In this document: positions 1 through 10,364 of the stretch, in pieces
Position numbering within the stretch: position 1 is the stretch's first letter
Layout: each line of letters starts with the position of its first letter
Virus record (IMG/VR): IMGVR_UViG_3300042892_005961
Span: 124,001-188,000 of that record
Reading direction: 5' to 3' (one strand)
Length of the DNA: 64,000 bases
Made by a program: the position numbers and the translations under genes
Notes under the pieces: model-generated
What the model was told of the DNA's origin: nothing
Database searches by the model: none
Seen by the model: the letters and a program-made list of their open reading frames with translations, nothing else

Positions 1-264
1 TTTAAATTGTATTCCGTTTTTAAATTTTGTTTTACTAATGACACTAATCGCCGCAATTGTTTTTCTTAATAATTCAAATTGTTCTCTGTCCAATGTTGCT
101 GTTCCATTTTTTTCATAGTTCTTCTGTGCAATCTCAGTCATATGTTTGTAAAACAATTCTTCATCTGAATTACTTAAAAAAAATTCTTTTGCTTCTAAAT
201 TGGTTTCAAAGTAATTTTTAACCGATTGAAGATATATTAAAACTTCAGGCGATAATTTATCCAT
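1..264 (-). CDS. hypothetical protein, 5' part (runs off left edge)
   Basis: Hand translation from ATG at 264 (TAATG overlap with nusG stop): MDKLSPEVLIYLQSVKNYFETNLEAKEFF..., no stop before position 1. Confidence 0.6.
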   Translation of the reverse strand, partial: MDKLSPEVLIYLQSVKNYFETNLEAKEFFLSNSDEELFYKHMTEIAQKNYEKNGTATLDREQFELLRKTIAAISVISKTKFKNGIQFK

Positions 265-788
265 TAAGGTTTCTGTATTTGGTCCAAAGTTAACGAAACT
301 GCAGTATTTCTTCCAAATATTTTTATTTCTACGTCAACACGATCACCTTTTACTTCTTTAATAATACCACTAAATTCTTTGAATGGTCCTTCACATACTA
401 TAATAGATTCTCCTGTATCAAATTTTAATTTTTTACTTTCAATATGTTCTTCTAATGTATCATCTTTCAATATACGTCTAACGTCAGTATCTTTTAATAA
501 CATTGGCATCCTATCACCCATCATACCCATAATATTAGGTATTAAAGATATTACCTTCAAATCATCATTTTCTAATTGTTTAAGAGATTCAAAATAAAGA
601 TATCCACTATATAATACTTTTTCTCTAATAACTTTTTTATTTTTAACTACAACGAATTCTTTCTCAGTAGGACAAACAAATCTTACAATTTTATTTATTC
701 TACCTAAACCAATATCTTTATTGAATTGTTCAGTTAATGATCTTTCTTTACCGGGTAAAACTTTTACCACGTACCATGCTGTATTCAT
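264..788 (-). CDS. nusG: transcription termination/antitermination factor NusG
   Basis: NGN domain (WYVVKVLPGKE...PTEK...KVLYSGYLY) plus KOW domain (GESIIVCEGPFKEFSGIIKEV...VEIKIFGRNTAVSL). Confidence 0.9.
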   Translation of the reverse strand: MNTAWYVVKVLPGKERSLTEQFNKDIGLGRINKIVRFVCPTEKEFVVVKNKKVIREKVLYSGYLYFESLKQLENDDLKVISLIPNIMGMMGDRMPMLLKDTDVRRILKDDTLEEHIESKKLKFDTGESIIVCEGPFKEFSGIIKEVKGDRVDVEIKIFGRNTAVSLTLDQIQKP

Positions 789-4315: not shown

Positions 4316-5647
4316 TTATTGAGTTTTTTCGTTGTATTTAAACATTTTCTTCATCTTCTCAACTTCTTCGTTGATTGATTTAGATTTAACCGGAACGGCT
4401 TGTTTGTTATATAACTCTCTATTGTCCTTATCCTTTTGTCTGTCTTTAACTTGTTTTTCAATTCCTTTCGCCGTTTCGGGTGTTGGAATTACATTGCCAT
4501 CTTTATCTTTAGGTTCTTCTCCAAGTTTAGCACCATTAGATGGTTTAACATTTGTCTTTTCTGTTGTCGGTGCATTACCAGTTGTTGAATGTCCTTCGAT
4601 TGATTTCTTTAATCTATCTTTAAATTGTTGAGATGGTTCAATATCATAATCTAAATTTTCTAATCCTGCAAAGTTTTTCTTAATTTCATCTTCTTGTTCC
4701 GGTGTGTTCTTTCTTGCAACTTTTTCACCTTTACCAATTGCCTTAGGAAATTCAGGATTATCGTTACCGTCAAACTTCATTGTTGCTGCGATTTTCTTTT
4801 CAACTGCGGCAATATTAGCCTTGTTTTCTTTACCACTTTCAGTGTGTGATTTTTTAGCGGCATCTAAACCAGGTATTGATTCACTAACCATTTTAGCGAT
4901 CATTTTAGTTAATTCAGTTTCAGTTAAACGTATTGTCTTCTTTTTTGATTCATACATACCTCCACCACACTCACACATTTCTTTACCACATTTTTCACAA
5001 CTTTTCTTTTCTTCACCCATTTCATCAGGTGTTTCTTCACTATTATCTACATAACTATGTTTTCTTCTTCGACCTCTTAACATTTCTTCAAAATCATCCC
5101 CACCTTCTTCCTCTTCTTCCATATAACCACCACCACATTCATCACATTCTTCTTCATTGGATGGATTTTTTATCTTTCCACTTCCACCACACTCTTCACA
5201 ACCGTTACCTTTACAAACTGGACACCAACGATCTTTTTCTTCTTTTACGTCATATTCCTTATCTCCAACTTTAAATTCTTTTTCACCTTTTAATTTAGCG
5301 GCAGCTAACGCACCACTAAATGCGTTTCCTTCCTCTGGTTGCATTTCTGTATTTTCCATATCGTTTGTTTCTTCTAATTGATCATTCATTTCATCTAATT
5401 TATCTAACATATCGTCGTGTGATTCATAAACACCTTTTTCGATAATAAGTTCTTTACCTGGATGCATTTCTTTAAATTTATCCATATCATTTTCAGCCTC
5501 TTCTTGACTACTATATGTACCTAAAGGAATACCTTCACATTTGATGTGGTATACTTCTTTATTACCTTCAGCTTCTTCCATTATAGTTTTTCTAACTTCG
5601 TCAGTAACTATACTTTCTATTAGTTGTTTGATTTCACTTACTTTCAT
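4316..5647 (-). CDS. acidic putative internal head/scaffold-like protein with Cys-rich zinc-finger-like motifs
   Basis: E/D-rich; CPVCKGNGCEECGGSG and CEKCGKEMCEC; LTETELTKMIAKMVSES-type helices; TATTTATA box upstream. Confidence 0.5.
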   Translation of the reverse strand: MKVSEIKQLIESIVTDEVRKTIMEEAEGNKEVYHIKCEGIPLGTYSSQEEAENDMDKFKEMHPGKELIIEKGVYESHDDMLDKLDEMNDQLEETNDMENTEMQPEEGNAFSGALAAAKLKGEKEFKVGDKEYDVKEEKDRWCPVCKGNGCEECGGSGKIKNPSNEEECDECGGGYMEEEEEGGDDFEEMLRGRRRKHSYVDNSEETPDEMGEEKKSCEKCGKEMCECGGGMYESKKKTIRLTETELTKMIAKMVSESIPGLDAAKKSHTESGKENKANIAAVEKKIAATMKFDGNDNPEFPKAIGKGEKVARKNTPEQEDEIKKNFAGLENLDYDIEPSQQFKDRLKKSIEGHSTTGNAPTTEKTNVKPSNGAKLGEEPKDKDGNVIPTPETAKGIEKQVKDRQKDKDNRELYNKQAVPVKSKSINEEVEKMKKMFKYNEKTQ

Positions 5648-6740: not shown

Positions 6741-7259
6741 TTAGTTAGTTTTTCTCTCTTGTATTAATGGGTTCATTGCGGTTTCAAATGTTTCTTGAAA
6801 CTTAGCTAATTTTTCTAATTCATTTGCAACATCTTGTTCCAATTTTAACATGTCGGCATTGATATATGCTCCTGACTCTTTACCCGCAATAAAAACAAAA
6901 CTAATGTCTTGGTCTGTTAATGAACCATCCAATCTAACTTGATCGGGAGCAATTGTGATACCAGGAGTAAAGTCGGCAATTTGTGAAACTTGTTGTTTAA
7001 AATTATCGATTAACTGAGATATGGCTGTTTTTTCACTATCTTGTAATGTTAAATCTGCCTCATCTGAAGAATTCATTTTAATTTCAACATCATTTACTAC
7101 CATGACGTCATTCTTAAGATTTTCTTCGGATTTATCCACCTCAGGTGATTGGAATCCAACCGCCTCGTTTAATGTTCTATTTGATGCCTTTGATTCTGTT
7201 ATAGTCCTAATGGTCTTTAACATACCTTTCATTACATCGTAATCATTTTTAGTTTTCAT
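6741..7259 (-). CDS. hypothetical (possibly head-associated) protein
   Basis: ORF track 180 aa; ATG at 7259 (MKTKND) preferred. Confidence 0.65.
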   Translation of the reverse strand: MKTKNDYDVMKGMLKTIRTITESKASNRTLNEAVGFQSPEVDKSEENLKNDVMVVNDVEIKMNSSDEADLTLQDSEKTAISQLIDNFKQQVSQIADFTPGITIAPDQVRLDGSLTDQDISFVFIAGKESGAYINADMLKLEQDVANELEKLAKFQETFETAMNPLIQERKTN

Positions 7260-7851
7260 TTGCATTGTTAAAAAAAACCCCAAAGTTAAAGGAAGGGTTT
7301 ATATCTGTATAAATACTTGAAAAATTGGATTTACATACTATCCCTGTGAAATTTGAAGCATTTTCCAAGTATCCGTGGGATGGTACCACTTGTTTAGTTA
7401 TTTTATGTTTATCACACAACTCATTACAAAGTTCAGAAAGGGATTTTAATTGGGTTTCGGAGTATACGTCCCAAAAATAATAGTTCCTCCAATTACGGAT
7501 ATGTGGTTCACCTCTGTATGGGTCTCCAATCCAATTATAAAGGACACCAGTGATGGTATCTTTGTTCAACCATCCTAAGTTCTCGACGGCTATTTTGATC
7601 TGTTTTTTGTCTATCTGAGGGTCATTAAATGTATTGGAACTATGGTCGGTATCAAACAGTTGATAAACTACACCTAATTTAGATATAACATAATGAGGGA
7701 CATCTTTATATTTCCCATTTAGACGATATTTCATTTTACTTAAAAAATCATCTAATCTTCTTTGGGTGTCGTATAGGAATATTTGTGTCTTCTTAGACTT
7801 TCTACGAGTAATATTTAAATTATCTAAAATTTCTACGTCTTGAACTAACAT
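7249..7851 (-). CDS. Amidase_2 (N-acetylmuramoyl-L-alanine amidase) fold protein with degenerate active site
   Basis: QIFLYDT, PHYVISKLGVVYQLFD, YSETQLKSLSELC, GIVCKSN..TDINP follow the amidase scaffold, but the His/Glu positions are substituted. Confidence 0.7.
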   Translation of the reverse strand: MLVQDVEILDNLNITRRKSKKTQIFLYDTQRRLDDFLSKMKYRLNGKYKDVPHYVISKLGVVYQLFDTDHSSNTFNDPQIDKKQIKIAVENLGWLNKDTITGVLYNWIGDPYRGEPHIRNWRNYYFWDVYSETQLKSLSELCNELCDKHKITKQVVPSHGYLENASNFTGIVCKSNFSSIYTDINPSFNFGVFFNNANEN

Positions 7852-8110
7852 TTCTCGATATAACTTTTTCTCCTTGTGGTAGTGTGTTTATTTCTTCTTC
7901 GGACGTTGGTATGATTGTTTTATTATTTTCCAAATCATATATTACTTGATTTGGGTTGGTATCGTCAGATTCCCAATATAAAGTCTCCTCTTTAGAATCT
8001 ATTAATTCTAACGTTTGGATTTGCTCTTGGGGGAGTGTATTTTCTATTGTTAACGAAACCAAGTCCACCTTCAATTCCTCCAATGTCGGAGTTAGGGACT
8101 CTTCTAATTT
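7820..8110 (-). CDS. -1 frame extension of the upstream membrane protein (or separate TTG-start ORF 7820..8083)
   Basis: Frame is open from the A10 run: KLEESLTPTLEELKVD...RRRNFR*. Confidence 0.55.
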   Translation of the reverse strand, partial: KLEESLTPTLEELKVDLVSLTIENTLPQEQIQTLELIDSKEETLYWESDDTNPNQVIYDLENNKTIIPTSEEEINTLPQGEKVISRNVSSRRRNFR

Positions 8111-9252
8111 TTTTTTTCATCATCTTGTTCGGATGATGTGGTTTCTTTGTTTTCGTAATGTAATCCTTCGTTCCCGTTCTGACCTATAATATCCATTCGT
8201 TCATTGTCCTCATCTATTTTTAACTCCACGACTTCCTCAGGTGTTGCAAATGGTTCAGGAACAAAACCATCAAATTCTTGTTCAGGAACTTCTAAATCCT
8301 CTTGAACTAAAATCTCAAACTCAAGTATTTCATTATCTTGTAAAATATTCTCCGTTTCGGGTTCTATAGTGGAAAAATTTCTTTGAACTTCTTCTTCAGT
8401 GGGTTCTTCTTGTAAAATATTCTCAATTTCTTCTTCCGTAAAGAAAGGTTCTTCGTCTTCTAAACCATCCATTAATGTTTCATCCCAATCAGATACTTCA
8501 TCATCCAAATCTTCTTTAATCATTGGGTTATCAAATGGTTCATCATATAAACCCATCTCTTCGTCGTTCTTCATTATCTCTGCCAATAATTCTCCTCTTC
8601 TTTTATATTCTTCCTCCGCTTTTTTTAATTCTTCATTTGGTGGAGGTGGATTTAATAAAACCTCTTCCAATTTTTTTAAATCATCTTCACTTAAATTTAA
8701 TCTTACAGACTCATCAATAAAGTTTTTTAAATCTTCGGGATTAGATTCCGATTCTTTAATTGGTGGTGTTTCATTTTCTTTTAATCTATCTTCTTCCGTA
8801 AATTTAACTAACATATGAAGAAAGGATAATGAAATGATTGGTAACATACCTCCAGCAAAAAACGCTAAGAATCTTTTATTACCTACTAAGTCAGTTGAAT
8901 CTACTCCCATTAATTCTGTTAATGGTAACACTAAATCAACCCAATCCCTAAACGACTGTCCATTGATATCTATATATGTATACGCAAAAAATACATTACC
9001 TATAAACTGTATTAATGTTACAACGGCAAATGGGAAATAAACTTTCTTACCCATGTTCGCCGAAATGGCGGCTAATGCCGATAATGCTGCAATCTCAATT
9101 CCAATTGATAAATAAACGGCCCAACTTACTGGATTGGATATACCATACCATTTTGTTACGTGTGAAATAGAAACAATTGCAACAGTAATGATTGGAATCA
9201 AAAATGCCGCAATAATTAATGTTTTAAAATTTTGGTTTAACCAATGTTTCAT
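8104..9252 (-). CDS. membrane protein (about 4 TM segments) with long acidic tail
   Basis: Hydrophobic N-terminal ~150 aa, then E/D-rich region; ends DDEKKN* on a slippery A10. Confidence 0.75.
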   Translation of the reverse strand: MKHWLNQNFKTLIIAAFLIPIITVAIVSISHVTKWYGISNPVSWAVYLSIGIEIAALSALAAISANMGKKVYFPFAVVTLIQFIGNVFFAYTYIDINGQSFRDWVDLVLPLTELMGVDSTDLVGNKRFLAFFAGGMLPIISLSFLHMLVKFTEEDRLKENETPPIKESESNPEDLKNFIDESVRLNLSEDDLKKLEEVLLNPPPPNEELKKAEEEYKRRGELLAEIMKNDEEMGLYDEPFDNPMIKEDLDDEVSDWDETLMDGLEDEEPFFTEEEIENILQEEPTEEEVQRNFSTIEPETENILQDNEILEFEILVQEDLEVPEQEFDGFVPEPFATPEEVVELKIDEDNERMDIIGQNGNEGLHYENKETTSSEQDDEKKN

Positions 9253-9554: not shown

Positions 9555-10364
9555 TTATAAATAGTTTAATAGACCAAAACTCTCGTTTCTAAGCTTTTTA
9601 ATGGCCTTATCACGTAATTGTCTGATACGTTCTTTTGTACAACCGTATTCCTCTCCCAAGTCCTCTAAGTTTGATTCAACACCTGTTAGACCATAATATC
9701 TCTCAATAATAACTCTTTCTCTTTCATCTAAGACACTTAACATTGCAGAAACTTTTTTCTTTATTTCTTCAGGTGAGTTCATGATAGCGTCAGGTCTTTC
9801 CGCTTCTTTGTTTGGAATAATATCTATTAGTTGGTCACCGTCCTCATTAATCTCTCTATATAGACCAACACAGTATGGTAGACCACTTGACACCGGTTCT
9901 TCACTATTATTAATAAAGAAATTATCTTCTTGACTTAATTCTTCTTTTTTAGATTTCTGTGACTCTTGAACTAAATTTGATGGAAGACGTATTGTTCTTG
10001 CGTTTTCATTTAATGATGCCATTATTGATTGTCTAACCCACCACACTGCATATGAAATAAATTTTAATCCACTTGTGGGATCAAATCTTTCCGCTGCCTT
10101 CATTAAACCAATATTACCTTCAGATATTATGTCCATAATATCCATCCCTTGATTTTGAAACATTTTCGCAACCGATATAACAAATCTTAAATTACCTACA
10201 ACCAATTCATCGTATAAAAATTTCTTTTCATGTTTAGTTATGGTCTTATCGTTAAGTCTTTCAAAAATCACCTCTTGTCTTTCGTGTGATATAACAGGTA
10301 TTCTACGAATGTCCTTTATATACTGTTGTATTTCCTCGGTGTTGTTTAAGATGGATTTTTTCAT
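9555..10364 (-). CDS. rpoD: RNA polymerase sigma-70 family factor (primary-sigma-like, no region 1.1)
   Basis: Region 2 NLRFVISVAK...EGNIGLMKAAERFD...KFISYAVWWVRQSI; region 4 LEDLGEEYGCTKERIRQLRDKAIKKLR. Confidence 0.9.
   Translation of the reverse strand: MKKSILNNTEEIQQYIKDIRRIPVISHERQEVIFERLNDKTITKHEKKFLYDELVVGNLRFVISVAKMFQNQGMDIMDIISEGNIGLMKAAERFDPTSGLKFISYAVWWVRQSIMASLNENARTIRLPSNLVQESQKSKKEELSQEDNFFINNSEEPVSSGLPYCVGLYREINEDGDQLIDIIPNKEAERPDAIMNSPEEIKKKVSAMLSVLDERERVIIERYYGLTGVESNLEDLGEEYGCTKERIRQLRDKAIKKLRNESFGLLNYL
9556..9563 (-). promoter_or_regulatory. candidate late promoter TATTTATA
   Basis: Overlaps the sigma-factor stop codon, 13 nt upstream of ATG 9542. Confidence 0.45.

What the first reader, a model, noticed from the sequence alone, without database searches (positions are those of the whole stretch)
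7820..8120. Candidate programmed -1 frameshift producing two isoforms of a 4-TM late membrane protein
Seen: the 382-aa ORF ends GAA AAA AAA AAT TAG (A10 at 8108-8117; A AAA AAA and A AAA AAT heptamers). The -1 frame is open for 96 more codons with the same acidic character (KLEESLTPTLEELK...RRRNFR) and overlaps the amidase start by 32 bp, filling what would otherwise be a ~250-bp gap. About 6 nt after the slippery site a nested hairpin can form (AGUCC/GGACU enclosing CUCCG-ACAU-UGGAG). Inference: recoding gives 382-aa and ~477-aa products. Known phage -1 frameshifts are mostly in tail chaperones or capsid proteins, not polytopic membrane proteins.
Basis: partly seen in the sequence, partly recalled or inferred. 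Interest (0 to 1): 0.7.

Follow-up and report, generated by a model that had tools for sequence, protein, structure and literature searches.

The report
Conserved hairpin-plus-A10 recoding site in phage
A membrane-protein gene beside the cell-wall amidase of a freshwater jumbo phage carries a run of ten A's preceded by an RNA hairpin, kept across dozens of diverged relatives, which most likely makes RNA polymerase add one A in some transcripts so that a 382-aa and a 477-aa protein come from one gene.

Summary
The sequence facts are right. On the minus strand the 382-aa ORF ends GAA AAA AAA AAT TAG (A10, 8108-8117). The -1 frame then runs 96 codons and overlaps the amidase start by 32 nt.

Recoding is strongly supported by comparison. 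Of 57 distinct relatives, 43 have an A9-A11 run (34 A10, 8 A11, 1 A9), a nearby frame-0 stop and a -1-frame extension. The extension carries a conserved motif, shows dN/dS of 0.1-0.4, and often has no start codon. Five lineages are fused in frame yet still keep A10.

The proposed mechanism is only partly supported. Instead, a co-varying hairpin abuts the 5' edge of the run (z = -5.9). Native arms are more stable than arms swapped between lineages (p = 1e-6). An upstream hairpin next to a run of 9 or more A's is the layout known for programmed transcriptional slippage (IS1447, Roseiflexus IS630, Citrobacter tssM1), not for ribosomal -1 frameshifting.

DNA contigs show A10. One metatranscriptome contig shows A11, which is only suggestive.

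Verdict: a real, conserved two-isoform recoding site, probably transcriptional, and a new member of a known kind. The protein's function is unknown; its membrane domain has a DUF2637-like fold.

The parts
8104..9252 (-). Frame-0 ORF, 382 aa: an N-terminal helical membrane domain followed by a long acidic, highly variable tail ending ...SSEQDDEKKN*
   Evidence: The family has 755 clusters at 50% identity.
8788..9252 (-). Conserved membrane domain (residues 1-155), with invariant polar residues H31, N40, W44, E53, T79, Q82, N86, W104. It has no Pfam family; its fold resembles DUF2637.
   Evidence: Alignments A1 and A2. AF2 model pLDDT 89. AFDB cluster hits to DUF2637, TM 0.5-0.63, E about 1e-2. 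No PDB match. No Pfam hit.
8118..8138 (-). Upstream RNA hairpin CAUCAUC-CGAACAA-GAUGAUG, whose 3' arm ends at the base before the A run. Proposed stimulator of RNA-polymerase slippage.
   Evidence: -6.7 kcal/mol, z = -5.87, 0 of 200 shuffles as stable. An abutting hairpin is present in most relatives with different stem sequences. The site ranks in the top 5% of control positions in 18 of 32 lineages. Arm-swap test: -6.0 vs -2.8 kcal/mol, p = 1e-6.
8108..8117 (-). A10 slippery run (T10 on the + strand). Proposed site where one extra A is added to part of the transcripts.
   Evidence: A9-A11 at the homologous junction in all 48 members of the long clade. A10 in DNA contigs.
8104..8106 (-). Frame-0 stop codon TAG, one base after the run. 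It ends the short isoform.
   Evidence: In relatives the stop lies 0-12 nt after the run and may be TAG, TAA or TGA.
7820..8110 (-). -1-frame extension (96 codons plus stop) with no ATG. It is reached only after the shift and gives the 477-aa isoform, junction ...DDEKKKLEE...
   Evidence: dN/dS 0.11-0.44 in diverged pairs. First NTG codons are not conserved, and absent in some lineages. The A11 strain encodes exactly this fusion (P0033).
7907..7981 (-). Conserved motif of the extension, LYWESDDTNPNQVIYDLENNKTIIP
   Evidence: Conserved in most frameshifted lineages and in in-frame homologues.
7249..7851 (-). N-acetylmuramoyl-L-alanine amidase (putative endolysin). Its start lies 32 nt inside the end of the extension.
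   Evidence: Pfam Amidase_2 E 1.7e-7. PHROG endolysin, weak hit. The overlap is conserved in relatives.
8040..8100 (-). Base pairing is possible, but it is not supported as a functional element.
   Evidence: z = +0.13. Mean z = -0.17 over 32 lineages.

Best explanation
This is a conserved programmed recoding site, probably working at the level of transcription. The proposed steps are:
1. While transcribing the minus strand, RNA polymerase makes a 7-bp hairpin (8138-8118) and then enters the A10 run (8117-8108).
2. Once 8-10 A's are made, the RNA:DNA hybrid is all rA:dT. The hairpin forming at its upstream edge sits where a terminator hairpin sits relative to its U tract.
3. The transcript can then slip back on the template, and a fraction of mRNAs receive one extra A (A11).

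Unslipped mRNA (A10) is translated to the TAG at 8104 and gives the 382-aa protein: membrane domain plus acidic tail. A11 mRNA is translated by ordinary decoding into the 477-aa protein. This longer form adds the conserved LYWExDDxNPNQxIYDLENN module and a basic RNVxxxRRRNxR end, and its translation terminates 32 nt inside the amidase gene.

Shown: the run, the stop, the extension, the hairpin, and their conservation and co-variation.
Inferred: that the polymerase rather than the ribosome shifts, what fraction shifts, and what the two isoforms do.

Ribosomal slipping on A_AAA_AAA may add to the yield. A plausible consequence, also inferred, is that only ribosomes on slipped transcripts reach the amidase start, so slippage could also set amidase translation.
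For: Conservation of the run and the -1 arrangement
- All 48 members of the long clade keep a run of 9-11 A at the junction (34 A10, 8 A11 and 1 A9 frameshifted, plus 5 in-frame with A10). This holds although the flanking protein sequence is unalignable between lineages and the run sits in different codon phases (EKKN*, LKKKS*, LKKKVQES*).
- 7 A's would suffice for a ribosomal shift. A/T runs of 9 or more are the class reported to slip efficiently in vivo (PMC5009743).
- The genome otherwise avoids such runs.
- All frameshifted lineages need the same change, one added A.

In-frame lineages
- The five in-frame versions kept A10, and the shifted frames often close within 1-4 codons after it. This is the same design as Thermus dnaX (PMC5009743).
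- In-frame and frameshifted states interleave on the tree; for example L048 is sister to L049 with support 100/98.

Upstream hairpin
- A hairpin abuts the run with a gap of 0 nt in 20 of 32 lineage representatives and 1-3 nt in 8.
- It is significant in the window (z = -5.87).
- It is rare at control positions of the same tails (median percentile 0.043).
- Its arms co-vary between lineages (native -6.0 vs swapped -2.8 kcal/mol, Wilcoxon p = 1e-6).
- A stem-loop directly 5' of the slip motif is the described stimulator in Roseiflexus IS630 (PMC5009743, Fig. 18 text) and accompanies the A9 run of IS1447 (PMC6211511).

Against a ribosomal cassette
- There is no conserved downstream structure.
- The genome makes no use of Shine-Dalgarno sequences.

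The extension is a translated part of the protein
- dN/dS is 0.11-0.44.
- It contains no ATG, and several lineages have no NTG codon at all before the conserved motif.
- It is homologous to the C-termini of the in-frame proteins.

Reads
- DNA contigs show A10.
- One metatranscriptome contig (run X25, 151 nt, depth 6) has an extra base in the run.
Against: - There is no direct measurement of transcript heterogeneity. Only assembled contigs were available, not reads.
- The second RNA run (X1) and the run of unknown type (X3) show A10.
- The A11 RNA contig comes from a relative (9 mismatches in 151 nt). It could come from a strain with A11 in its DNA, such as the one encoding P0033, or from contaminating DNA or reverse-transcriptase slippage.
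- A10 always contains an in-phase A_AAA_AAA heptamer, so ribosomal -1 shifting or sliding on poly(A) cannot be excluded and may contribute.
- In Roseiflexus IS630 the hairpin is described as favouring forward realignment (PMC5009743). Here the productive event is an insertion.
- About a quarter of lineages lack a convincing abutting hairpin (L072, L049, L071, L050).
- The lineages are related, so the p-values are optimistic.
- The transcribing polymerase is unknown. A phage sigma factor and a NusG-like gene suggest host RNAP.
Confidence: 0.6

Rival explanations
1. Programmed ribosomal -1 frameshifting, or ribosome sliding on consecutive AAA codons, is the main route. All mRNAs carry A10, and a fraction of ribosomes slip back one base on A_AAA_AAA / A_AAA_AAT to give the same 477-aa product.
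For: - An in-phase X_XXY_YYZ heptamer is present in every lineage, because any phase of A10 contains one.
- The shift direction is always -1.
- The frame-0 stop lies 0-12 nt after the run, which could pause ribosomes.
- Poly-A heptamers are known ribosomal shift sites (PMC3711429), and sliding on A runs has been reported (PMC5009743).
Against: - No conserved or significant downstream stimulator: z = +0.13 in the window, mean -0.17 over 32 lineages.
- No Shine-Dalgarno use in this genome, so an SD-like upstream stimulator is unlikely.
- Selection keeps 10-11 A's, not 7.
- The conserved structure is upstream and abuts the run. It would lie melted inside the ribosome during decoding of the run (inference from ribosome footprint size).
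- Retention of A10 in in-frame lineages fits either model.
Confidence: 0.22
2. DNA-level phase variation only. Replication slippage toggles the genomic run between A10 (short protein) and A11 (long protein), each phage genome makes one form, and there is no recoding.
For: - A natural A11 strain, 97% identical, encodes the fused 477-aa protein in two metagenome assemblies.
- In-frame and out-of-frame states switched repeatedly on the tree.
- Homopolymers are slippery for DNA polymerases (PMC3711429).
Against: - Among close relatives the out-of-frame state outnumbers the in-frame state heavily: 1 fused protein among the 120 best hits, 10 of 10 JGI contigs with A10, and no A11 contig in DNA runs at depth 42-79.
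- The extension nevertheless stays under purifying selection in these lineages.
- A co-varying RNA hairpin next to the run is not explained by this model.
- Caveat: contigs hide minority variants, so low-level DNA heterogeneity is not excluded.
Confidence: 0.08
3. Two separate genes. The extension is translated on its own from TTG 8083 or another non-ATG start, with no shift.
For: - A TTG occurs at codon 10 of the extension in the window.
- The A-rich stretch upstream resembles the A-rich leaders that this genome uses in place of Shine-Dalgarno sequences.
Against: - The positions of the first ATG/GTG/TTG vary widely between lineages. Several have none before the conserved motif, or none at all (L044, L059, L061, L068, L072).
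- The -1 frame is closed 3-28 codons upstream of the run.
- In-frame homologues show a single polypeptide.
- The run lies 25-34 nt before the TTG, outside the -10 to -14 zone of A enrichment.
Confidence: 0.03
4. Sequencing or assembly error, or a decaying gene. The true sequence is A11, or the gene is a pseudogene.
For: Homopolymers are error-prone, and one A11 version exists.
Against: - A10 with the same stop appears in dozens of independent assemblies and samples and across lineages down to about 50% tail identity.
- A decaying gene would not keep the extension open, conserved and under purifying selection.
Confidence: 0.01

Closest known systems
IS1447-type IS3 elements (A9 run following a stem-loop; programmed transcriptional slippage; PMC6211511)
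   Same: A homopolymeric A run of 9 or more lies directly after a predicted mRNA stem-loop. Transcripts with one base more or fewer give a fused long product alongside a short one.
   Different: - IS1447 is a transposase gene in a mobile element. Its productive event is loss of one A, and slippage was measured at about 16% each way.
- Here the gene is a phage membrane-protein gene, the productive event is gain of one A, and nothing has been measured.
Roseiflexus IS630 stem-loop-mediated transcriptional slippage (Penno et al. 2015, as summarised in PMC5009743)
   Same: [quoted passage not shown]
   Different: - The IS630 motif is heteropolymeric (T5C5), and the hairpin is described as favouring forward realignment.
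- Here the motif is A10 and backward realignment (an insertion) is needed.
- The original paper could not be read here.
Citrobacter rodentium tssM1 / Yersinia tssM (A11 before the stop; PMC4256274)
   Same: A poly-A tract just before a premature stop in the gene of an inner-membrane protein. Added A's give a full-length variant, and two length variants are made from one gene.
   Different: - tssM1 is a bacterial T6SS gene, and its site is described as a rescue of an interrupted gene in a few species.
- No upstream hairpin is mentioned in its abstract.
- Here the site is conserved across a large phage family, with a co-varying hairpin.
Thermus thermophilus dnaX (run of 9; tau in frame, gamma by slippage; PMC5009743)
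   Same: The in-frame lineages (L048, L058, L064, L065) look like dnaX: the long product is in frame, an A10 run is retained, and stops lie close by in the shifted frames.
   Different: - dnaX is a replication gene with a known 1:1 product ratio.
- Here both configurations, long in frame or long out of frame, occur within one family.
Shigella spa13/spa32 (transcriptional slippage; the extension overlaps the next gene's start; PMC5009743)
   Same: The slippage-dependent C-terminal extension ends inside the start of the downstream gene, so slippage can influence that gene's expression.
   Different: - spa13 is a type III secretion gene.
- The coupling to the amidase proposed here is only inferred from the conserved overlap.
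Phage -1 PRF cassettes (lambda G/GT tail chaperone, T7/T3 capsid 10A/10B; PMC5009743)
   Same: A phage gene gives a short and a C-terminally extended product in a set ratio by a shift to the -1 frame.
   Different: - Those are ribosomal events at heptamers in virion or assembly genes.
- Here the run is 10-11 nt, the conserved structure is upstream, and the gene encodes a polytopic membrane protein next to a lysis enzyme.

Membership tests
Programmed transcriptional realignment at A/T runs (dnaX of Thermus, mxiE/spa13, tssM1) | Homopolymeric A or T run of about 9 or more at the frame junction | tested here: met
   A10 at 8108-8117. A9-A11 at the junction in all 48 long-clade versions.
Programmed transcriptional realignment at A/T runs (dnaX of Thermus, mxiE/spa13, tssM1) | The run is conserved at the nucleotide level, with no synonymous AAG/GAG interruptions, across diverged relatives | tested here: met
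   No interruption in any lineage, although the genome-wide rate of uninterrupted EKK coding is only 19%. The peptide context differs between lineages while the run is kept.
Programmed transcriptional realignment at A/T runs (dnaX of Thermus, mxiE/spa13, tssM1) | The mRNA population is heterogeneous in run length while the DNA is homogeneous | tested here: inconclusive
   DNA contigs show A10. One RNA contig shows A11 and one shows A10. Only contigs were available, from related strains, with no read counts.
Programmed transcriptional realignment at A/T runs (dnaX of Thermus, mxiE/spa13, tssM1) | Two protein products sharing the N-terminus are made | not testable with these tools
   Needs a Western blot or mass spectrometry.
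Hairpin-stimulated slippage (Roseiflexus IS630, IS1447) | Nascent-RNA stem-loop immediately 5' of the slip motif | tested here: met
   Hairpin at 8118-8138 abuts the run, z = -5.87. Gap of 0-3 nt in 28 of 32 lineages. Control-position test and arm-swap test.
Hairpin-stimulated slippage (Roseiflexus IS630, IS1447) | Slippage efficiency depends on the hairpin | not testable with these tools
   Needs mutagenesis. An indirect hint: the in-frame lineages have weak or no hairpin.
Bacterial/phage -1 programmed ribosomal frameshift cassette | In-phase X_XXY_YYZ heptamer | tested here: met
   A_AAA_AAA and A_AAA_AAT in frame 0.
Bacterial/phage -1 programmed ribosomal frameshift cassette | Conserved stimulatory structure 5-9 nt downstream, or an SD-like element upstream | tested here: not met
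   Downstream z = +0.13 and mean -0.17 over 32 lineages. The genome makes no use of SD sequences.
Holins | Membership of a described holin family, or a small size with 1-4 TM segments and a short charged tail | tested here: not met
   No Pfam or PHROG holin hit. The protein is 382/477 aa with a tail of over 220 aa. The membrane domain is 86% identical across lineages, which is unusual for holins by general knowledge.
Holins | Gene adjacent to the endolysin gene | tested here: met
   It lies directly upstream of, and overlaps, the Amidase_2 gene in all lineages.
DUF2637 (PF10935) membrane proteins | Significant match to the Pfam model | tested here: not met
   No hit at E <= 0.1 for the window protein or any of 57 family members. 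There is only fold-level resemblance (TM 0.5-0.63, E about 1e-2) and a language-model lead (0.75).

The most novel reading that the evidence does not exclude
The hairpin-plus-A10 element may be a family-wide isoform 'rheostat' of freshwater jumbo phages that infect hosts with Bacteroidota-type translation. RNA-polymerase slippage would set the ratio of a truncated to a complete membrane protein. Because only ribosomes on slipped transcripts terminate inside the amidase start, it would also gate translation of the cell-wall amidase. That would make it a lysis-timing device built on transcript heterogeneity rather than on dual starts, as in lambda S105/S107. Repeated evolutionary toggling between A10 and A11 would then tune the default isoform.
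Probability: 0.15. Interest if true: 0.8.

Novelty: new member of a known kind. Interest (0 to 1): 0.62.

Why it matters
Programmed transcriptional slippage is well documented in bacterial genes (dnaX, IS elements, secretion systems) and in RNA viruses. My literature searches found no conserved case in a dsDNA-phage membrane or lysis-region gene.

This family offers several things:
- It is large and naturally replicated: hundreds of clusters, and dozens of independent stem sequences in front of the same run. That makes it a ready-made covariation series for testing how a nascent hairpin promotes slippage on a homopolymer.
- It contains both configurations, long form in frame and long form out of frame, within one family.
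- It warns annotators that these genes are systematically mis-called as a truncated protein followed by a gap.
- If the link to amidase translation holds, it would be a new way for a phage to control lysis.

Tried and rejected
- **Phage GenBank collection.** No DNA match. There was only one weak protein match to the membrane domain and none to the extension.
- **Family searches.** Pfam and PHROGs gave nothing for the extension or the membrane domain.
- **First structure model.** With 12 sequences it was too poor to use (pLDDT 62). It was redone with 57 sequences (pLDDT 89).
- **PDB fold search.** Nothing credible.
- **Raw reads.** None were available. Every run was held as Logan contigs, so indel frequencies in RNA against DNA could not be measured.
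- **The RNA contig with A11.** It cannot be assigned to slippage, because an A11 DNA strain exists and shares nearby variants.
- **Metagenome pattern scan.** It returned only 10 contigs, all A10.
- **Penno et al. 2015.** The paper is not held, so its content is cited only through PMC5009743 and PMC6211511.
- **Stop-codon reassignment.** Rejected. Frame 0 meets TAA four codons after the TAG, and relatives use TAA, TAG and TGA there.
- **Intrinsic terminator.** Rejected. The hairpin is followed by A's, not U's, on the gene strand, and on the other strand the T run precedes the hairpin.
- **Third frame (one A fewer).** It has no conserved length, 1-38 codons, so no third selected product is proposed.
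- **RNA polymerase genes.** No RNAP domains were found in the large ORFs of the window.
- **Complex prediction.** None was run, because no binding claim is made.
Full report
**1. What is in the sequence**

The feature lies on the minus strand. ORF 8104..9252(-) encodes 382 aa and ends GAT GAT GAA AAA AAA AAT TAG, with ten A's at 8108-8117. One base back, the -1 frame reads KLEESLTPTLEELK...SRNVSSRRRNFR* for 96 codons (7820..8110). This extension contains no ATG. The -1 frame is closed by a stop three codons upstream of the run. Its end overlaps the ATG (7851) of a 200-aa Amidase_2 protein by 32 nt. Without the extension there would be a 252-nt gap in a genome that is 91% coding.

**2. The run is real and is not chance**

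- The window is part of a 211-kb IMG/VR phage record with 31% GC.
- That genome holds only three A/T runs of 10 or more. One of the others is intergenic, and one lies in frame at the start of another ORF.
- Although 80% of Lys codons are AAA, Glu-Lys-Lys is written without interruption in only 6 of 31 cases. The genome therefore avoids such runs.
- A10 with the same stop occurs in more than 30 independent viral contigs and in 10 of 10 JGI metagenome contigs.
- It also occurs in the contigs of two lake DNA runs, at depth 42 and 79, with no indel.
- Assembly error is excluded.

**3. Comparative anatomy**

The protein belongs to a very large family from freshwater-lake metagenomes. The family has thousands of hits, 755 clusters at 50% identity, and contigs up to 335 kb.

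The first ~155 residues form a helical membrane domain that is 86% identical across lineages. The tail behind it is acidic and changes beyond recognition. Yet even relatives with unrelated tails end ...EKKN*...EKKK* or ...LKKKS*.

I collected 57 distinct gene versions, counting the window's own, from IMG/VR:

| Class | Versions | Features |
|---|---|---|
| Frameshifted | 43 | Terminal run (34 A10, 8 A11, 1 A9), frame-0 stop 0-12 nt behind it, -1-frame extension of 35-151 codons |
| In frame | 5 | Single ORF of 406-527 aa, still with A10 at the same junction |
| Short | 9 | 232-265 aa, no run, no extension; a sister clade |

On a maximum-likelihood tree of the membrane domain, the 48 long versions form one clade (support 100/100). 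In-frame versions are scattered among frameshifted ones; for example L048 is sister to L049 with support 100/98.

Two further lineages fetched from other sources show the same layout (A10 and A11). Of 150 family representatives, 53 end at such a Lys run.

A strain 97% identical to the window carries A11. It encodes exactly the predicted 477-aa fusion, with junction DDEKKKLEE (P0033).

**4. The extension is a translated part of the protein**

- It carries a conserved module, LYWExDDxNPNQxIYDLENN..IIP, and a basic end, RNVxxxRRRNxR. Both also close the in-frame homologues.
- dN/dS in the -1 frame is 0.11-0.44 for the well-diverged pairs. The three pairs with values of 0.7 or more had five or fewer synonymous changes.
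- The first ATG/GTG/TTG in the extension moves from codon 9 to codon 63 between lineages. It is missing altogether in several, so independent initiation cannot explain the extension.
- Stop-codon reassignment does not help either: frame 0 hits TAA four codons after the TAG, and relatives use all three stop codons there.

**5. Which machine shifts?**

It is no more stable than shuffled sequence (z = +0.13, with 102 of 200 shuffles as good). Its outer stem is lost in a 94%-identical relative. Across 32 lineage representatives the 60 nt downstream have a mean z of -0.17.

The upstream 60 nt behave differently, with a mean z of -1.36. The reason is a hairpin whose 3' arm ends at the base before the run:

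- In the window it is CAUCAUC-CGAACAA-GAUGAUG at 8138-8118, with -6.7 kcal/mol, z = -5.87 and 0 of 200 shuffles as stable.
- The gap between stem and run is 0 nt in 20 of 32 representatives, 1-3 nt in 8, and 5 nt or more in 4.
- The stems differ between lineages: CAUCAUU/AAUGAUG, CAUCUUC/GAAGAUG, CUUCGUCA/UGACGAAG, CUUCCCAC/GUGAGGAAG, CUUUAUCUG/CAGAUGAAG, and others.
- Compared with every other position of the same acidic tail, the real site ranks in the top 5% in 18 of 32 lineages, with a median percentile of 0.043.
- When the 5' arm of one lineage is joined to the 3' arm of another, stability drops from -6.0 to -2.8 kcal/mol (Wilcoxon p = 1e-6). The lineages are related, so this p-value is optimistic.
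- The in-frame lineages have weak or no such hairpin.

Four observations point to RNA-polymerase slippage rather than ribosomal frameshifting:

1. The run is kept at 10-11 A's, and in every codon phase, when 7 would do for a ribosome.
2. A co-varying hairpin abuts the run's 5' edge.
3. There is no downstream stimulator.
4. The genome makes no use of Shine-Dalgarno sequences: 6% of genes against a 4% background, with A-rich leaders of the Bacteroidota type instead.

The literature supports this reading:

- A/T runs of 9 slip efficiently in vivo, and Thermus dnaX uses such a run (PMC5009743).
- The Roseiflexus IS630 transposase needs a nascent-RNA stem-loop next to the hybrid (PMC5009743, Fig. 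18 text).
- Citrobacter tssM1 has A11 before its stop and makes two length variants of an inner-membrane protein, both of which are needed (PMC4256274).

By inference, a hairpin abutting the run would lie melted inside a ribosome that is decoding the run. For RNAP that has just made 8-10 A's, the same hairpin sits where a terminator hairpin sits.

All frameshifted lineages need one added A. This matches the reported predominance of insertions at Thermus dnaX (PMC5009743).

One difference should be noted. In IS630 the hairpin is described as favouring forward realignment, which gives a deletion. Here an insertion is needed.

**6. RNA evidence**

Only Logan contigs were available, not raw reads.

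- In metatranscriptome X25, a 151-nt contig (depth 6) across 8029-8178 has one extra base in the run, giving A11.
- In metatranscriptome X1 and in the run of unknown type X3, the contigs have A10.
- The X25 contig is from a related strain, and an A11 DNA strain exists.

This evidence is therefore suggestive only.

**7. In-frame lineages and evolutionary behaviour**

Where the long form is in frame, the retained A10 is often followed within 1-4 codons by stops in the shifted frames. Slippage there would make a truncated protein, which is the Thermus dnaX design. Stops are frequent in AT-rich off-frames, so this is consistent with the model but not decisive.

The repeated switching between A10 and A11, and between in-frame and out-of-frame states, with the run always kept, fits a device that yields both isoforms whichever one the DNA encodes. 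It does not fit a simple on/off phase switch. Among close relatives the out-of-frame state dominates heavily (1 fused protein among the 120 best hits), while the extension stays under selection.

**8. What the protein is**

- The membrane domain has no Pfam or PHROG family.
- With a 57-sequence alignment, AlphaFold gives a confident five-helix model (pLDDT 89).
- The PDB holds nothing similar.
- The best AlphaFold DB clusters are mostly DUF2637 proteins, at modest scores (TM 0.5-0.63, E about 1e-2). This agrees with a weak language-model lead. It is a resemblance of fold, not membership.
- The gene always sits directly upstream of the amidase and overlaps it. A small one-TM gene and a sigma-70 factor gene lie upstream.
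- The protein is not a member of any described holin family. Its size and the extreme conservation of its membrane domain are unlike typical holins. A role in lysis is suggested only by position, and 'late' expression is untested.
- The complete protein's reading frame ends inside the amidase start in all clades, including the short clade. Slippage could therefore also set amidase translation by coupling. The review describes this for Shigella spa13/spa32 (PMC5009743). Here it is inference.

**9. Verdict**

- The two-isoform recoding is strongly supported. I put about 0.85 on some form of recoding.
- The mechanism is more likely transcriptional slippage aided by an upstream hairpin (about 0.6) than ribosomal -1 frameshifting (about 0.2). 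The two may act together.
- It is a new member of a known kind of recoding. It is notable for its phage setting, for the size of the family, and for the natural covariation series at the hairpin.

Noticed in passing
window 8602-8727 (-), residues 176-217 of the 382-aa protein: The acidic tail contains a segment (KNFIDESVRLNLSEDDLKKLEEVLLNPPPPNEELKKAEEEYK) that matches the C-terminal half of Pfam TacA1/DUF1778 antitoxin above the gathering score (E 5e-5, 23.6 bits against a cutoff of 21). Many relatives carry the same precomputed hit. This may be a toxin-binding-like motif on a membrane anchor.
   Followed up: no
window 264-788 (-): The phage encodes a NusG-like transcription elongation factor (Pfam NusG 2.4e-9 plus KOW). 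Together with the sigma-70 factor at 9555-10364 (-), this suggests the phage re-programmes host RNA polymerase. That could bear on slippage efficiency.
   Followed up: no
G000:C1:64003-64012 (outside the window; minus strand): This is the only other coding A10 run in the 211-kb genome. It lies in frame at codons 7-9 of an ORF beginning MGYIEELKKKPIQIENF, and no upstream hairpin is predicted.
   Followed up: partly
whole genome G000 (start regions of 170 ORFs): There is no Shine-Dalgarno signal: 6% of genes against a 4% background. Instead A is enriched at -14 to -10 (up to 66%), which is the Bacteroidota-type initiation pattern. It hints at the host phylum.
   Followed up: partly
L048:3794-3803 and L058:3767-3776: Two in-frame relatives carry a second A10 run about 90-190 codons upstream of the junction run, followed closely by off-frame stops. 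These may be additional truncation sites.
   Followed up: partly
window 8040-8147 (-): In the window a long-range helix, GAAACC/GGUUUC, brackets the upstream hairpin, the run and the downstream region (108 nt, z = -3.2). By eye it is not kept in the 84-94% identical relatives L042 and L043.
   Followed up: partly
window 8788-9252 (-): The membrane domain has invariant polar residues inside its helices across 57 diverse members (H31, N40, W44, E53, T79, Q82, N86, W104). This suggests a specific binding or transport function, not a generic membrane anchor.
   Followed up: partly
window 4316-5647 (-): This 443-aa acidic protein has several CxxC clusters, for example CPVCKGNGCEECGGSGK and CDECGGG. 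It has no Pfam hit.
   Followed up: no
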